Below, one piece after another: positions 17,425 through 20,403 of a stretch of DNA of 64,000 bases. The notes below the pieces were generated by a model. The model ran no database searches, was not told the origin of the DNA, and was given only the letters and a program-made list of their open reading frames with translations. The position numbers and the translations under genes are program-made. How positions within the stretch are numbered: position 1 is the first letter of the stretch; every line of letters begins with the position of its first letter. Source of the DNA: Macrostomum lignano (lineage: Eukaryota); NCBI GenBank assembly GCA_002269645.1, contig NIVC01003830.1:10831-74830 (forward strand), read 5' to 3'.

Positions 17425-20403
17425 CTAGGTCCAGCCATCCGCCTGACGCTGGAGAGCGCCCGGCAGCTGACCAGAACCTTGGTGACTTAGCGCCGCTCCT
17501 TGGAGTGTACGGGCCAGAACCCTACTCACTACTTCAGGCACTGAGTCACCAGAGCCATCAGTAGGAAGCGGCCGTTCGGCAGCACTCGGCCAGAGCGTCG
17601 TAATCACCTCTACGAGTGCTTGAACCAGGCAAGGCAGTAGCCCACTCACCAGTCCTGGGATCAGCTGTTCAAAGTTTGCACTCGGCGGCGGATTATTGTT
17701 TTGAGTCGCTTTTGGCACGGTAGATTGCGATATCGAGTCGGTCGATTCGCGCACAGGGCGCTTCCGGCTAGGGAGGGCGTGGCCGGTGAGCCAGGACGAG
17801 TCATCGTCGCCTCCTGTCGCCGCTGGCGCCCGTGCTGCGGCGTCGGCCGAACTCGGGACTGCTGCCGATGTTGGTCTCGACGCGGGGGCGGGGGGCGCTG
17901 CTGCTGCCGCTGCCGATGTTGGTCTCAGTACAGGGGCGGGGGGCGCCACTGCTGCCGCTACCGATACAGGTGCTGCTGCTGTCGCTGCTGCTGCCAATGA
18001 TGGTGGAGCGGTCAACTGGCCAGTCACAGCCGCGGCTTCACGAGCGCCCGCTGCGTAGGCAGCCGCACGCCTTTGGGCCGCACTGTGGCTGTCTATCGCT
18101 ACCTGGCAGTTTCTGTAATTAGCGCGGTGTGACTCGCCGCAGTTCGCGCACTTGACAGCATCTTGCCTGTCGCACTCACGCCAGTGATGCTCGGCCGCAC
18201 AGATTTGACAGCGCTTGGCCGCTCTACATCGTTTGGCGTGATGCCCGAACCTCTGGCATTTTTGGCATTGTGGAGCCCGGGCGGGAGTCGCCGTTCTGCT
18301 TGGCTCGCATTGGTACGTGATGAAGTCTGTGATGATGCCTGTTGCCAAACAGGCGTCCACGGTCTGCTTGTTTTGGACAAAGACTCGCATCAGGTATGTG
18401 GGTTGATTTTTGCTTTTGGCAATAATGCGGCTAGCCGAGATGATTTTTAGGCCCGCACTGTCTTTCAGGTGGCGCTTGAAATCTTCAGCACTGACGTTGA
18501 GCGGCACACCGCGCACGACAAAGGAGTGGATCTCCTGGGTCATCGGTCGCTGCGGTGCAGTCCGCCTCGCTTGTTGGTCAGGCCTAGCTTTTGGAAGCCT
18601 CCTAGTAACCGGACCCCCGACAAACTGGGGCTCGCGCAGGGACCCACGCAGGAAAACTTGATGGTCCCGTGGCGTGGCCGGAAAAACCAGGAAGCCAAAT
18701 TCGTGCGCTAATGATTTGGTAAGTGTGGCTCGGGCCGACCCTTGAAAGTTGGCCGCGAGCCACTTGAGAAATTCTAATTGGCTGGCTTCAGCTGTTGTGT
18801 TGAAAACCACTGGCACCACATTACTGCTATTAGGTTGTCGTGGTCTTTGCTGATTTGCCGCCATGTCCGCATAGGAGCGACGGTTGCCACCCCGCCCCGC
18901 ACCGCCGGCGCTGCCGCCGCCGTTGCCCTGGGCTCGTGGGCCGCCTGGGACCGCAGAGCCAGACGCGCCGGCTGCTCCGCAGTCTCCTGGTTGCCCGTTG
19001 GTCACAGCTGTCCGGGAGCCCGGCGCAGCCAGGCTGGTGCCCGCCCGGCCACTGCCAGGCCCATCTTTGCCGCTTTGGTCTTGGTCTCTGTTGCGGGGTC
19101 TGCCAAGCGCAGCAGGGCCGGGCGCGCCGGCCGCCCCGCTGCTGCCTGGTTGCCCGGTCGCCGCGCTCGTCCGGGAGCCCGGCGTGGCAGGACCGGAGTC
19201 CGCCCCGCCTCTGCCGGGCCCATCTCCGACGTATGCAGCTGCTGCAGTTGGGCCTCCGCGCCCCGGTGCGGCTGTGCGAGGAGGTTCCGTCACTCGAAAG
19301 GTGAGTGATATCCTGACACCCTCCTGCATGCCCACAGCCGGGACGCTGTGCTGGCATCGTCGCTGGCATCCGCCGGCCATTATTATTAGTGAGCCAGGCT
19401 CTGTACGAAACCGCCCGATGATTTTTTGATCGCTGTTTTGACGGACCAAGAATGTTCTTACCGCACCAAGCGACACCGTAGCTATGTATGGGTCCCTGCC
19501 TAGCTCGGGTTCATTGTCCGCGTGATACGGGATCTGGTCGTCAGCGCTTTCATAAAAGTTAATTAGGCACGAATTAAACCTCGGCATTCCAATATCAGCG
19601 TTGATCTCTAGGAAATCCCTTAAGTCTTCAACTGCCGGGTGCCATTTTAGATTCTGTTGTAGTGCAACGCCTGAGTATGAGTACTGAGGCCCGTACCACA
19701 CAACCTTACGTTGCTCTTGTGGCCGGTGCCTGATCGCCTTTGGTAGTAGGTCGGTGATGAGGCAGTCGTACAATTGTTGGGAAACAGATTCAAGCATTTG
19801 CGGATAGTACTCAAGGATGACGTCGCCAAACCGTTGGATTTTTTCGCCAGTTCGATCAGGATGAACTGGAAAGCCGATGGGCGCACGCAGGTAGTGTGCG
19901 GTGTCCGCCTCATCTTCATTGTCCGTGGCATCGCGACTGCTTGAGCTGCTTGAGATGTTGGCTGTTTCGGTAGGCACCTGCTCCTGAGTCTCTGTACCTG
20001 GGTCACTGTCCACCTGGGCCAGTTCTTCCTGTACAGTTGCGGAGCTACTGGTCGCCGAGTTATCTGAGTCACTAGCTACCACAATGACCTCGCACTGCTC
20101 GGTCAGTGCCGGGTTAGAGAGTACTGGTGATGCAGTAGCTGAAGAGTGATCAGAGCCCGGCGTCAGCGTACTTGGCGCTAGTGGCGGAGTAGTCTTACTC
20201 GGCATGCCAGCTGATGATCGCCTTTTTTGAGTTGGAGGCACTGAGGTGCGACTAGTAGTACCTTTGCTGCTGGGAACAGCCGAAGCTGCGCCAGTAGTCT
20301 GGTAACTTGCTGGGGCCCAGTCCGAGGACTGCCGAGTGTTGGCCTTCTTGGTTGGCGGTTCAACCGCGCTCACCGATTTTTGATAGGTGGGAAGTTTGGA
20401 CAT
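17425..20403 (-). CDS. LINE ORF1, 992 aa: S/T-rich N-terminus, AlkB-family 2OG-Fe(II) dioxygenase domain, G/A-rich linker, RRM-like region and three CCHC zinc knuckles, Ala/Pro-rich tail
   Basis: AlkB: FNSCLINFYESADDQIPYHADNEPELG, IATVSLGAVRTF, GSLIIMAGGCQRRCQHSVP, RISLTFR (~19294-19830). Gag-like: SFVVRGVP..., CQKCQRFGHHAKRC, CQICAAEHHWREC, CANCGESHRANYRNC. Confidence 0.93.
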   Translation of the reverse strand: MSKLPTYQKSVSAVEPPTKKANTRQSSDWAPASYQTTGAASAVPSSKGTTSRTSVPPTQKRRSSAGMPSKTTPPLAPSTLTPGSDHSSATASPVLSNPALTEQCEVIVVASDSDNSATSSSATVQEELAQVDSDPGTETQEQVPTETANISSSSSSRDATDNEDEADTAHYLRAPIGFPVHPDRTGEKIQRFGDVILEYYPQMLESVSQQLYDCLITDLLPKAIRHRPQEQRKVVWYGPQYSYSGVALQQNLKWHPAVEDLRDFLEINADIGMPRFNSCLINFYESADDQIPYHADNEPELGRDPYIATVSLGAVRTFLVRQNSDQKIIGRFRTEPGSLIIMAGGCQRRCQHSVPAVGMQEGVRISLTFRVTEPPRTAAPGRGGPTAAAAYVGDGPGRGGADSGPATPGSRTSAATGQPGSSGAAGAPGPAALGRPRNRDQDQSGKDGPGSGRAGTSLAAPGSRTAVTNGQPGDCGAAGASGSAVPGGPRAQGNGGGSAGGAGRGGNRRSYADMAANQQRPRQPNSSNVVPVVFNTTAEASQLEFLKWLAANFQGSARATLTKSLAHEFGFLVFPATPRDHQVFLRGSLREPQFVGGPVTRRLPKARPDQQARRTAPQRPMTQEIHSFVVRGVPLNVSAEDFKRHLKDSAGLKIISASRIIAKSKNQPTYLMRVFVQNKQTVDACLATGIITDFITYQCEPSRTATPARAPQCQKCQRFGHHAKRCRAAKRCQICAAEHHWRECDRQDAVKCANCGESHRANYRNCQVAIDSHSAAQRRAAAYAAGAREAAAVTGQLTAPPSLAAAATAAAPVSVAAAVAPPAPVLRPTSAAAAAAPPAPASRPTSAAVPSSADAAARAPAATGGDDDSSWLTGHALPSRKRPVRESTDSISQSTVPKATQNNNPPPSANFEQLIPGLVSGLLPCLVQALVEVITTLWPSAAERPLPTDGSGDSVPEVVSRVLARTLQGAALSHQGSGQLPGALQRQADGWT

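What the first reader, a model, noticed from the sequence alone, without database searches (positions are those of the whole stretch)
17425..20403. LINE ORF1 carries an intact AlkB (ALKBH2/3-like) RNA/ssDNA demethylase domain fused to gag-like RRM + 3xCCHC
Seen: ~19294-19830 encodes FNSCLINFY..IPYHADNEPELG..IATVSLGAVRTF..QHSVP..RISLTFR, with the HxD...H iron triad and C-terminal RxxxTFR arginines, in frame with an I/Jockey-type RRM and three CCHC knuckles. Established: AlkB/ALKBH2/3 oxidatively remove m1A/m3C from ssDNA/RNA; some plant RNA viruses carry AlkB in their replicases; common LINE ORF1 accessory domains are esterase, PHD and coiled coil, not AlkB, to my knowledge. Inference: the element packages its own demethylase in the RNP to clear RT-blocking or silencing methyl marks from its RNA or first-strand cDNA. 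This is the best candidate for an undescribed system here.
Basis: partly seen in the sequence, partly recalled or inferred. Interest (0 to 1): 0.93.

Follow-up and report, generated by a model that had tools for sequence, protein, structure and literature searches.

The report
LINE retrotransposon carrying its own AlkB demethylase
A full-length, apparently active jumping gene (LINE) inserted at one fixed spot in a flatworm-type ribosomal DNA spacer encodes, in its RNA-packaging protein, an intact ALKBH3-like nucleic-acid demethylase; a whole diverged family of such elements keeps this domain, and no published description of it in LINEs was found.

Summary
Window 17425-20403 (minus strand) is an intact 992-aa ORF1. 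It has a disordered N-terminus, a complete AlkB dioxygenase domain (aa 180-376), a Gly/Pro-rich linker, two RRM-like folds and three CCHC knuckles. The AlkB domain matches Pfam 2OG-FeII_Oxy_2 at 9e-25. Its AF2 model (pLDDT 87) matches human ALKBH3 best (TM 0.78-0.87). H294/D296/H352 and R364/R370 are present. An intact APE+RT ORF2 follows 17 nt downstream.

The element spans 13920-21936 and has a 13-14 bp target-site duplication. It lies in the rDNA intergenic spacer. Three of the five copies of that spacer site in the window are occupied, so it is a site-specific LINE.

The domain is not a one-off capture. At least six diverged AlkB-ORF1 lineages exist, several in Macrostomum lignano. All keep the catalytic residues. 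AlkB has the lowest dN of any ORF1 module, and its divergence tracks that of ORF2.

AlkB also occurs in the upstream ORF of Penelope-like elements.

Literature searches found AlkB only in orchid Gypsy elements and plant RNA viruses, not in LINEs.

The most likely function is repair of template RNA or cDNA (m1A/m3C) in cis. This is inferred, not shown. I rate it a new variant of a known kind, interest about 0.72.

The parts
13920..21936 (-). Full-length site-specific LINE (about 8.0 kb): 5'UTR, ORF1, ORF2, 3'UTR and (CAA)n-type tail
   Evidence: Boundaries come from alignment with empty spacer sites at window about 2645-2658 and about 47424-47437. The flanks are 99.7-100% identical.
21937..21950 (-). 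Upstream copy of the target-site duplication (AAGACGGTCTCTT, 13-14 bp)
   Evidence: The same 14 bases of the empty site flank both ends of the insert.
13906..13919 (-). Downstream copy of the target-site duplication. The first A is ambiguous with the tail.
20404..21936 (-). 5'UTR, about 1.5 kb, AT-rich (about 37% GC), no ORF of 80 aa or more, CpG o/e 0.29. It contains a GTTAGACTAG motif shared with the M. lignano relative's 5'UTR.
17425..20403 (-). ORF1, 992 aa, intact
19867..20403 (-). ORF1 aa 1-179: Ser/Thr/Pro/acidic-rich N-terminal region with no domain match, poorly conserved among relatives
   Evidence: dN highest here
19276..19866 (-). AlkB (ALKBH3-like) Fe(II)/2OG dioxygenase domain, ORF1 aa 180-376. 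Catalytic residues: H294, D296, H352 (iron triad) and R364, R370 (2OG). Lid residues: R232, Y241, Y243, S244.
   Evidence: Pfam 8.9e-25. PDB ALKBH3 1e-25. AF2 pLDDT 87.1, pTM 0.86. Foldseek ALKBH3 E 4e-17, TM 0.78-0.87. Residue positions.
18832..19275 (-). Gly/Pro/Ala/Ser-rich low-complexity linker (aa 377-524) with an internal imperfect repeat. It is 74% GC and poorly conserved.
18598..18810 (-). RRM-like fold 1 (ORF1 aa about 532-602)
   Evidence: AF2 beta-alpha-beta-beta-alpha-beta topology. Foldseek matches to tandem-RRM proteins.
18301..18528 (-). RRM-like fold 2 (ORF1 aa about 626-701)
18106..18270 (-). Three CCHC zinc knuckles (aa 713-726, 732-744, 752-766)
   Evidence: All Cys/His are invariant in 13 sequences.
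17428..18105 (-). ORF1 C-terminal Ala/Pro-rich region. Its conserved extreme C-terminus is shared with M. lignano protein P0124.
14534..17407 (-). ORF2, 957 aa, intact: APE endonuclease (about 16688-17350) and reverse transcriptase (about 15044-15808). No RNase H or C-terminal Cys motif was detected. Its ATG lies 17 nt after the ORF1 stop.
13920..14533 (-). 3'UTR ending in a conserved terminal motif (GGCAGAGCCC..GGGCTGATCCG ... GTTTAACAACAACA, window 13919-13981)
   Evidence: The same motif ends the two truncated inserts in the window and the M. lignano relatives.
31632..32906 (-). 5'-truncated, non-coding insert of a sibling family at the identical spacer site (12-bp TSD). It shares only the last 65 nt or so with the full-length element.
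62683..63449 (-). Second, shorter 5'-truncated copy of that sibling family at the same site (9-bp TSD); 96.6% identical to the copy at 31632-32906

Best explanation
This is a full-length, probably still mobile, APE-type LINE that inserts at one defined sequence (CGCCGTA|AAGACGGTCTCTT) in the rDNA intergenic spacer. Its ORF1 protein combines the usual LINE RNA-packaging module (two RRMs plus three CCHC knuckles, 'type I' ORF1) with a complete, catalytically equipped AlkB-family Fe(II)/2-oxoglutarate dioxygenase. That domain is most like ALKBH3, the AlkB homologue that works on single-stranded DNA and RNA. The two modules are joined by a flexible linker of about 150 aa.

Proposed mechanism:
- ORF1p binds in cis the RNA that encoded it.
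- The tethered AlkB domain oxidatively removes base methyl lesions on the Watson-Crick face (1-methyladenine, 3-methylcytosine) from the element's template RNA, and possibly from the single-stranded first-strand cDNA.
- Such lesions would otherwise stall the element's reverse transcriptase and give dead, 5'-truncated copies.

Shown here: domain identity, completeness, catalytic residues, fusion architecture, family-wide purifying selection, site-specific insertion.

Inferred: enzymatic activity, the substrate (RNA versus cDNA; m1A/m3C versus other marks), cis action, and the benefit to retrotransposition.
For: - Domain identity and completeness: Pfam 2OG-FeII_Oxy_2 8.9e-25; ALKBH3 1e-25 against ALKBH2 1e-11 by sequence; AF2 model pLDDT 87 with best Foldseek hits human ALKBH3 bound to ssDNA (E 4e-17, TM up to 0.87), then ALKBH2, and E. 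coli AlkB only at TM about 0.6.
- Catalytic and 2OG residues (H294, D296, H352, R364, R370) and lid residues equivalent to ALKBH2 R110/Y122/F124/S125 are present in the window and in every aligned TE copy (residue roles from PMC2790896 section 13).
- Like animal ALKBH3, the TE domains lack the aromatic 'FG[KR]' finger (ALKBH2 F102) needed to flip bases out of duplex DNA. The bacterial relatives keep it (PMC2790896). This argues for single-stranded substrates.
- The domain is integral to the element. It lies in one ORF, inside a TSD-bounded insert.
- The same architecture occurs in P0115-P0118, M. lignano PAA49615 and others, and next to APE+RT ORF2s in L001, L004, L005/6 and L014. That is 5 of 5 relatives with a recoverable ORF1.
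- Selection: AlkB dN is 0.25-0.45, the lowest or joint lowest of the ORF1 modules; dN/dS is about 0.11 where dS is still measurable. AlkB identity (41-68%) tracks ORF2 identity (37-56%) across lineages, so there was one old acquisition followed by co-divergence.
- Precedent: plant-virus AlkB domains repair m1A/m3C and prefer RNA (PMC2553587). An orchid Gypsy-borne AlkB demethylates RNA in vitro (PMC9289625). RNA-virus replicase AlkB domains are among the structural matches.
- Likely recent activity: both ORFs are intact, the TSD is perfect, and the flanks are 99.7-100% identical to empty sites.
Against: - No biochemical or expression data exist, so activity and substrate are unproven.
- Some close bacterial AlkB groups act on etheno adducts rather than methyl bases (PMC2790896 abstract). 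The lesion type therefore cannot be read from sequence.
- The phylogenetic origin is unresolved. The NJ bootstrap for a TE AlkB clade is only 21%, and placement near ALKBH3 rather than bacterial group-1B-like AlkBs is unsupported.
- In human L1, m6A promotes retrotransposition (PMC7873242 abstract), so 'removing methyl marks helps LINEs' is not a general rule.
- Only one full-length copy lies in this window. The host species is inferred only from relatives.
- The literature search covers open-access text only. Repbase and Dfam could not be queried.
Confidence: 0.6

Rival explanations
1. Epitranscriptomic eraser. The AlkB domain removes regulatory methyl marks (m6A, or mRNA/tRNA m1A) that the host places on the element's RNA to mark it for decay, sequestration or chromatin silencing. 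On this reading it counters host surveillance rather than repairing damage.
For: The orchid Ty3/Gypsy AlkB is an m6A RNA demethylase in vitro, and its authors read it as an answer to epitranscriptomic control of TEs (PMC9289625). From my own knowledge, untested here, ALKBH3 also removes m1A from RNA. The fusion to RNA-binding modules fits equally well.
Against: The domain is ALKBH2/3-like, not ALKBH5/FTO/ALKBH9-10-like. No ALKBH5 or FTO chain reached E <= 1e-5 by sequence. ALKBH3 and ALKBH2 head the structural list. In human L1, m6A helps retrotransposition (PMC7873242). Nothing is known about m6A or m1A on this element's RNA.
Confidence: 0.2
2. DNA-side function. The domain repairs 3-methylcytosine or 1-methyladenine in single-stranded DNA at the integration intermediate (nicked target or first-strand cDNA). 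Alternatively it counteracts 3mC made as a by-product of host DNA methyltransferases acting on TE DNA.
For: The best structural matches are ALKBH3-ssDNA complexes. DNMTs generate 3mC and co-evolve with ALKB2, and Macrostomum lignano is reported to retain DNMT1/3 and ALKB2 (PMC9246332). TPRT creates ssDNA.
Against: ORF1 proteins of this type are RNA chaperones bound to the template. Fusion to ORF2 would be the more obvious place for a DNA-side enzyme. CpG is not depleted in ORF1 (o/e 0.91), so heavy germline methylation of this copy is not evident. This rival overlaps with the best explanation for cDNA repair and is hard to separate from it by sequence.
Confidence: 0.14
3. The domain is a catalytically irrelevant nucleic-acid-binding or scaffolding module, a fossil of a captured host exon retained for structural reasons.
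For: No activity data exist. The linker and termini evolve fast.
Against: The iron triad, both 2OG arginines and the lid residues are invariant across lineages that are only 35-55% identical overall. AlkB is the best-conserved part of ORF1.
Confidence: 0.04
4. Artefact or one-off. A host ALKBH gene fragment was joined by chance to a LINE ORF1 in this one copy, or by assembly error.
For: Only one full-length copy is in the window. The exact protein is not on record elsewhere.
Against: The same fusion appears in at least six diverged lineages from independent assemblies and in M. lignano GenBank proteins. It forms a single ORF within a TSD-bounded insert.
Confidence: 0.01

Closest known systems
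Human ALKBH3 (and ALKBH2) / bacterial group-1B AlkB repair dioxygenases
   Same: Same fold, with iron triad HxD...H, RxxxxxR 2OG site and nucleotide-recognition-lid residues. ALKBH3 is the best sequence match (93 bits) and the best structure match (TM 0.78-0.87). Like ALKBH3, the domain lacks the duplex-flipping aromatic finger.
   Different: The known enzymes are stand-alone host or bacterial proteins of about 200-290 aa. Here the domain is an internal module of a 992-aa retrotransposon ORF1, only about 30-45% identical to any stand-alone AlkB. Its phylogenetic origin is unresolved.
AlkB domains in replicases of plant +ssRNA viruses (Flexiviridae, Closteroviridae; van den Born et al. 2008, PMC2553587)
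   Same: An AlkB domain captured by an RNA-templated replicator. It has been shown to repair m1A/m3C with a preference for RNA and is interpreted as genome-RNA maintenance. These domains are among the structural matches.
   Different: They sit in a viral replicase polyprotein of plant viruses. Here the domain sits in the RNA-chaperone ORF1 of an animal nuclear retrotransposon, so the template is copied by reverse transcription.
Orchid (Phalaenopsis) Ty3/Gypsy elements with an AlkB/2-ODD ORF (PMC9289625)
   Same: A retrotransposon-borne AlkB-family domain with RNA binding and demethylase activity shown in vitro. It was proposed as a counter to host control.
   Different: That case is an LTR retrotransposon in plants. 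The domain is at the C-terminus of a separate extra ORF, is related to plant m6A demethylases, and was acquired recently in one genus. Here the element is a non-LTR LINE in an animal, the domain is ALKBH3-like and fused to RRM+CCHC, and it is old enough to have co-diverged with ORF2 down to about 37% identity.
Type I LINE ORF1 (RRM(s) + CCHC knuckles; Jockey, I, R1 and related lineages; Khazina & Weichenrieder classification as summarised in PMC4120745)
   Same: Two RRM-like folds followed by three knuckles spaced CX2CX4HX4C / CX2CX3HX4C / CX2CX3HX6C, with a bicistronic ORF1-ORF2(APE+RT) layout. This corresponds to subtype IB in PMC4120745.
   Different: The known accessory ORF1 domains are PHD, esterase, coiled coil and Tnp22. 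None of the 448 surveyed elements has an AlkB or oxygenase domain. This ORF1 is two to three times longer.
Target-specific LINEs of multicopy RNA genes (R1/R2 in 28S, R7/R8 in 18S, Keno/Utopia in U2 snRNA)
   Same: Repeated insertion at one exact sequence in tandem RNA-gene arrays, with 5'-truncated copies and a conserved 3' end. M. lignano relatives insert inside U5 snRNA genes.
   Different: The target here is in the non-coding rDNA spacer, about 0.5 kb downstream of a U1 gene and about 2.1 kb upstream of 18S, not in an rRNA coding region. As far as I could find, this site and a U5 target have not been described. Clade membership was not determined.

Membership tests
AlkB family Fe(II)/2-oxoglutarate dioxygenases (ALKBH2/3 - bacterial 1B branch) | Double-stranded beta-helix core with N-terminal nucleotide-recognition lid | tested here: met
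   AF2 pLDDT 87.1, pTM 0.86. Foldseek PDB: ALKBH3 E 4e-17, TM 0.78-0.87, aligned over about 200 of 216 residues.
AlkB family Fe(II)/2-oxoglutarate dioxygenases (ALKBH2/3 - bacterial 1B branch) | HxD...H iron-binding triad | tested here: met
   H294, D296 and H352 align with ALKBH3 H191/D193/H257 in the HMMER alignment. They are invariant in 33 sequences and in all TE copies.
AlkB family Fe(II)/2-oxoglutarate dioxygenases (ALKBH2/3 - bacterial 1B branch) | C-terminal RxxxxxR 2-oxoglutarate-binding motif | tested here: met
   R364-ISLTF-R370 is invariant.
AlkB family Fe(II)/2-oxoglutarate dioxygenases (ALKBH2/3 - bacterial 1B branch) | Lid residues contacting the methylated base (ALKBH2 R110, Y122, F124, S125; PMC2790896) | tested here: met
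   R232, Y241, Y243 (aromatic) and S244 lie in 'QRKVVWYGPQYSYSG'.
AlkB family Fe(II)/2-oxoglutarate dioxygenases (ALKBH2/3 - bacterial 1B branch) | Oxidative demethylase activity on m1A/m3C | not testable with these tools
   Needs a recombinant protein assay.
ALKBH2-type duplex-DNA repair enzymes | Aromatic finger (F102 in an FG[KR] hairpin) for flipping a base out of dsDNA | tested here: not met
   The hairpin is shortened and lacks the aromatic-Gly motif in the window and in all TE copies, as in animal ALKBH3. It is present in the bacterial relatives.
Orthologue of animal ALKBH3 (host-gene capture) | Nested within the animal ALKBH3 clade in a phylogeny | tested here: inconclusive
   In an NJ tree on 139 columns, the animal ALKBH3 clade has 92% bootstrap, the TE clade only 21%, and the link between them 13%. 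No Macrostomum host ALKBH2/3 sequence was available.
APE-type non-LTR retrotransposon (LINE) | ORF2 with N-terminal apurinic-like endonuclease and reverse transcriptase | tested here: met
   Exo_endo_phos_2 1e-11 and RVT_1 1.4e-34.
APE-type non-LTR retrotransposon (LINE) | Target-site duplication, simple-repeat 3' tail, 5'-truncated copies, no LTRs | tested here: met
   13-14 bp TSD and a (CAA)n tail. Sibling copies are truncated to 1.27 and 0.77 kb at the same site.
Type I ORF1 (RRM + CCHC) | At least one RRM immediately upstream of CCHC knuckle(s) | tested here: met
   Two RRM-like folds and three invariant knuckles. Pfam zf-CCHC itself was below threshold in the window protein but matched in relatives P0118 and L014.
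Named LINE clade (Jockey / R1 / I etc.) | RT phylogeny with reference elements | not tested
   No reference RT set was available. The ORF2 search gave only unnamed hits: two close (57%, 47%), the rest 27% or below. No RNase H or C-terminal Cys motif was seen in ORF2.
Target-specific LINE | Independent insertions at the same nucleotide position of a repeated target | tested here: met
   Three of five spacer sites in the window are occupied at the same position by two families that share the 3' end. M. lignano relatives are joined to U5 snRNA nt about 49 in two loci.
Target-specific LINE | Absence of copies elsewhere in the genome | not testable with these tools
   The host genome is not available. 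Logan contigs end at the element termini.
Plant-virus or orchid-Gypsy AlkB acquisitions | Located in a viral replicase polyprotein, or in an extra ORF of an LTR element | tested here: not met
   The domain is fused inside a LINE ORF1, and the element has no LTRs.

The most novel reading that the evidence does not exclude
A whole clade of flatworm target-specific LINEs, and separately some Penelope-like retroelements, have made an ALKBH3-like nucleic-acid demethylase a standing part of their RNA-packaging protein. This would be the first nucleic-acid repair or epitranscriptome-editing enzyme found in non-LTR retrotransposon ORF1. It would imply that base methylation of the template RNA or cDNA, whether damage or a host mark, is a real, selectable barrier to reverse transcription-based mobility in animals, one that elements can overcome with their own enzyme.
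Probability: 0.5. Interest if true: 0.82.

Novelty: new variant of a known kind. Interest (0 to 1): 0.72.

Why it matters
LINE ORF1 proteins are regarded as RNA chaperones and packaging proteins with a short list of accessory domains (coiled coil, PHD, esterase). A conserved, catalytically equipped ALKBH3-like dioxygenase would add an enzymatic 'template maintenance' or 'mark erasing' activity to the LINE ribonucleoprotein. This parallels what plant RNA viruses and one orchid LTR element have done independently.

It gives a direct, testable handle on an open question: do methyl lesions or marks on retrotransposon RNA limit retrotransposition in animals? It also supplies a compact, naturally RNA-tethered demethylase module.

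It carries a practical warning too. Counts of 'ALKB2/ALKBH' genes in flatworm genomes, used in DNMT/ALKB2 co-evolution arguments, may be inflated by transposon-borne copies.

The site-specific biology is of separate interest for targeted-insertion research. The window element uses an rDNA spacer target. Its relatives insert in U5 snRNA genes, appear to carry a U5 3' half, and rebuild the gene.

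Tried and rejected
1. Homologue search with the whole ORF1 returned nothing, because low-complexity words filled the 8000-candidate list. It was repeated with the AlkB domain alone and with an exhaustive HMMER scan of aa 170-770.

2. Exact-sequence look-ups of ORF1, ORF2 and P0001 found no contig. The host genome record could therefore not be identified.

3. Origin of the domain. The NJ tree with bootstrap is unresolved (TE clade 21%, link to ALKBH3 13%). 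I do not claim host ALKBH3 capture or bacterial origin.

4. dN/dS. Synonymous sites are saturated in most comparisons (pS 0.7-0.8). Only the P0115/P0116 pair gives usable ratios, so I rely on the ranking of dN and on residue invariance.

5. I tested whether the spacer target is a decayed U5 gene, because relatives target U5. A permissive Rfam scan of 2300-3400 found only U1. The two targets share only the TA|AAGA core.

6. LINE clade naming through ORF2 homologues gave only unnamed, distant hits. The clade is left undetermined.

7. I considered that the AlkB ORF might be a host gene next to a LINE. This is rejected: it is a single ORF inside the TSD-bounded insert, and the fusion recurs.

8. 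I considered that the two short inserts at the same site are truncated copies of the same element. This is rejected: they share only the terminal 65 nt or so and have no coding similarity. They belong to a sibling family, or are non-autonomous elements using the same 3' end.

Full report
**1. What is at the coordinates**

Window 17425-20403 on the minus strand is one uninterrupted 992-aa ORF. An intact 957-aa ORF (14534-17407) follows 17 nt downstream. That second ORF carries an apurinic-type endonuclease and a reverse transcriptase (Pfam Exo_endo_phos_2 1e-11, RVT_1 1.4e-34).

ORF1 matches Pfam 2OG-FeII_Oxy_2, the AlkB-type family, at E 8.9e-25. The score is 88.5 bits against a cut-off of 31.2, over aa 230-370. 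Against all PDB sequences the best hits are human ALKBH3 (1e-25, 93 bits) and then ALKBH2 (1e-11).

The catalytic residues are H294 and D296 (YHADNE), H352 (CQHSVP), and R364/R370 (RISLTFR).

**2. Structure of the two ORF1 modules**

An AlphaFold2 model of aa 170-385, built on 33 homologues, is confident (pLDDT 87.1, pTM 0.86). Its best PDB matches are crystal structures of human ALKBH3 bound to ssDNA (E 4e-17, TM 0.78-0.87), followed by ALKBH2. E. coli AlkB reaches only TM about 0.6. The domain is complete, including the N-terminal nucleotide-recognition lid.

The lid residues that contact the methylated base in ALKBH2 (R110, Y122, F124, S125; PMC2790896) have equivalents R232, Y241, Y243 and S244.

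The aromatic finger (ALKBH2 F102) flips a base out of duplex DNA. It is conserved in ALKBH2 and bacterial group 1B but not in ALKBH3 (PMC2790896). It is absent from the window protein and from every transposon-borne relative, whereas the bacterial relatives in my alignment keep an FG[KR] motif there. This points to single-stranded substrates.

A second model, of aa 525-770 (pLDDT 85.5), shows two consecutive beta-alpha-beta-beta-alpha-beta folds. Their best structural matches are tandem-RRM proteins such as NONO, HuR RRM1-2, Pub1 and U2AF65 (E 2e-7 to 1e-5). Three CCHC knuckles follow, and all twelve Cys/His are invariant in 13 aligned ORF1s.

So ORF1 consists of:
- a disordered N-terminus (aa 1-179);
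- AlkB (180-376);
- a Gly/Pro-rich linker (377-524);
- RRM1 and RRM2;
- three CCHC knuckles;
- an Ala/Pro-rich tail.

The C-terminal module is the classical type I ORF1, subtype IB in PMC4120745.

**3. Genomic context and element boundaries**

The window is a tandem rDNA array on the minus strand, with four 28S, four 5.8S and several 18S genes. A U1 snRNA gene sits in each intergenic spacer.

I compared the interrupted spacer with uninterrupted ones. This delimits the insert to 13920-21936 (about 8.0 kb) with a 13-14 bp target-site duplication (AAGACGGTCTCTT). The flanks are 99.7-100% identical to the empty sites.

The element has:
- a 1.5-kb AT-rich 5'UTR without ORFs;
- a 614-nt 3'UTR ending in a conserved motif (GGCAGAGCCC...GGGCTGATCCG...GTTTAACAACAACA).

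Two other spacers carry inserts at exactly the same position: 31632-32906 and 62683-63449. These are 96.6% identical to each other, 5'-truncated to different lengths and non-coding. They share only the terminal 65 nt or so with the full-length element. They represent a sibling family, or a non-autonomous element using the same 3' end.

Three of the five sites in the window are therefore occupied, at the same nucleotide. This is a target-specific LINE of the rDNA spacer, about 0.5 kb downstream of U1 and about 2.1 kb upstream of 18S.

**4. Is the AlkB domain a one-off?**

No. An exhaustive HMMER scan of 1.84 billion representative proteins, using ORF1 aa 170-770 as query, found proteins that match both the AlkB and the RRM-CCHC parts. 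They are P0115 (757 aa), P0116 (962), P0117 (843), P0118 (892), P0126/P0268, P0119/P0265 and P0120/P0267. All contain Pfam 2OG-FeII_Oxy_2.

The named members are all Macrostomum lignano, a free-living flatworm: PAA49615, PAA54533, A0A1I8... and others. The closest fragment, P0001, is 76% identical and carries a UniParc number in the same batch as those proteins.

Contigs recovered for these proteins show the same bicistronic layout, with an APE+RT ORF2 downstream:
- L001 (full length, 9 kb);
- L004;
- M. lignano L005 and L006;
- L014, which holds the closest ORF2 relative (57%) and whose upstream ORF is 61% identical in AlkB.

Every relative whose ORF1 could be recovered has the domain (5 of 5).

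The iron triad, both arginines and the lid residues are invariant across them.

In codon-level comparisons synonymous sites are saturated. AlkB has the lowest or joint lowest dN of the ORF1 modules (0.25-0.45, against 0.5-1.0 in the linker and termini). dN/dS is about 0.11 in the one pair where dS is measurable.

Pairwise identities in AlkB (41-68%) rank the lineages exactly as ORF2 (37-56%) and RRM-CCHC (33-45%) do. The domain was therefore acquired once, before this group of LINE families diversified, and has been kept under purifying selection since.

**5. Origin of the domain**

Stand-alone AlkBs of about 200 aa, mostly bacterial, and animal ALKBH3 score about equally (about 90-108 bits). 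This is consistent with the published closeness of ALKBH2/3 to bacterial group 1B.

An NJ tree places the transposon domains together and near animal ALKBH3. Bootstrap support is weak: 21% for the TE clade and 13% for the link, against 92% for animal ALKBH3 itself. I leave the origin open.

**6. Mechanism**

*Shown:* a complete AlkB domain with catalytic residues, of ALKBH3 type, is tethered by a flexible linker to the RNA-binding module of a LINE ORF1. It is conserved family-wide, in an element that looks recently active.

*From established knowledge:*
- AlkB/ALKBH3 enzymes oxidatively remove 1-methyladenine and 3-methylcytosine from single-stranded DNA and RNA.
- These lesions block base pairing and polymerases.
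- Plant-virus AlkB domains do this preferentially on RNA (PMC2553587).
- LINE ORF1 proteins bind their own RNA in cis.

*Inference:* the domain keeps the template RNA, and perhaps the nascent single-stranded cDNA, free of RT-blocking methyl lesions. That would raise the yield of full-length insertions. I give this about 0.6.

*Rivals:*
- erasing regulatory m6A/m1A marks, as proposed for the orchid Gypsy AlkB (PMC9289625), about 0.2;
- a DNA-side role, including repair of DNMT-generated 3mC (M. lignano is reported to keep DNMT1/3; PMC9246332), about 0.14;
- a non-catalytic role, about 0.04;
- artefact, about 0.01, effectively refuted.

**7. Comparison with what is known**

Transposon- or virus-borne AlkB domains are known from plant RNA viruses and from one orchid LTR-retrotransposon lineage.

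Surveys of LINE ORF1 list RRM, CCHC, coiled coil/Tnp22, PHD and esterase. The 448-element Jockey-superfamily survey contains no mention of AlkB or oxygenase.

Six full-text searches combining AlkB or dioxygenase with LINE, non-LTR, ORF1, Penelope or Macrostomum found no description. Repbase and Dfam could not be searched, so an unpublished library entry cannot be excluded.

I classify this as a new variant of a known kind: a LINE with a captured accessory enzyme, and another case of AlkB capture by an RNA-templated replicator.

**8. By-products**

(a) AlkB also lies in the upstream ORF of a different retroelement type. In L003 and L007 the downstream gene is an RT with a weak GIY-YIG match. 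In L007 the units are arranged head to tail. Both features are typical of Penelope-like elements.

(b) The M. lignano relatives are joined at their 3' end to nucleotide about 49 of U5 snRNA. Each unit is preceded by a U5 3' half. That half differs from the 3' half of the local target gene at the end of the array. The element therefore appears to carry U5 sequence at its 5' end and to rebuild an intact U5 gene on insertion.

(c) Two 18S genes in the window are split by R2-type elements.

**9. Verdict**

The functional mechanism is plausible but untested. Novelty holds within the literature I could search. Interest 0.72.

Noticed in passing
window 1-64000 (28S at 5100-8857, 24396-28153, 35357-39113, 50040-53794; U1 at 3148-3310, 22440-22602, 33409-33570, 47932-48093): The whole window is a tandem rDNA array on the minus strand. 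A complete U1 snRNA gene (151.7 or 145.1 bits) lies in every intergenic spacer, in the same orientation as the rRNA genes.
   Followed up: partly
window 55626-59311 (intact 1156-aa ORF 55692-59162, minus strand) and 41001-44140 (frameshifted, 5'-truncated copy): Two 18S genes are split at the same position by an R2-type single-ORF element: N-terminal C2H2 fingers, RT, and a C-terminal CCHC plus restriction-like endonuclease. It is an 18S-specific R2-superfamily (R8-like) element, one copy of which looks intact.
   Followed up: partly
window 29218-29525: One rDNA unit keeps only the first 308 nt or so of 18S. The rest of 18S and about 80 nt of ITS1 appear to be deleted, making this a dead rDNA unit inside the array.
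   Followed up: no
window 31632-32906 and 62683-63449: Non-coding, 5'-truncated inserts of a second family occupy the same spacer site as the AlkB-LINE and share only its terminal 65-nt motif and (CAA)n tail. They could be a sibling LINE with a long 3'UTR, or a SINE-like parasite of the AlkB-LINE machinery.
   Followed up: partly
L006 9666-21146 and L005 1123-12200 (Macrostomum lignano GCA_002269645.1): M. lignano relatives form head-to-tail arrays starting at an intact U5 snRNA gene. Each 3' tail is joined to U5 nt about 49 (CTA|AAGATTTCCG). Each unit begins with a U5 3' half that differs from the local target's 3' half at the array end. The element seems to target U5, carry U5 sequence at its 5' end (co-transcription?) and regenerate a U5 gene on insertion. 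The target core TA|AAGA is shared with the window's rDNA-spacer target.
   Followed up: partly
L003 2120-7398; L007 2-11779: AlkB domains related to the LINE ones also occur in the 883-1012 aa upstream ORF of Penelope-like retroelements. The downstream RT has a weak GIY-YIG match, and the units are tandem with a period of about 6.9 kb. One protein also has a weak GDSL-esterase match. AlkB capture by retroelements therefore seems recurrent, or the domain was exchanged between element classes.
   Followed up: partly
L001 4346-4717; L012 3269-3643; L013 3177-3551: One sublineage (P0117/P0118) has an extra conserved ORF of about 123 aa between ORF1 and ORF2, with no Pfam match.
   Followed up: no
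literature (PMC9246332) versus M. lignano proteins P0119-P0128: M. lignano is cited as retaining ALKB2 together with DNMT1/3. Many 'Fe2OG dioxygenase' gene models in its proteome are fragments of these LINE ORF1s, so presence or absence calls for host ALKB2 in flatworms may need TE masking.
   Followed up: no
Logan samples SRR31628392, -393, -394, -403, -434, -437: Several deeply diverged AlkB-LINE lineages (P0115, P0116, P0117, P0118; 33-48% identical to one another in the modules compared) recur, in different combinations, in runs of one numerically adjacent accession series. Up to three occur in a single run, and the same protein occurs in several runs. This suggests that they coexist in the same or closely related organisms. 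The species could not be identified.
   Followed up: no
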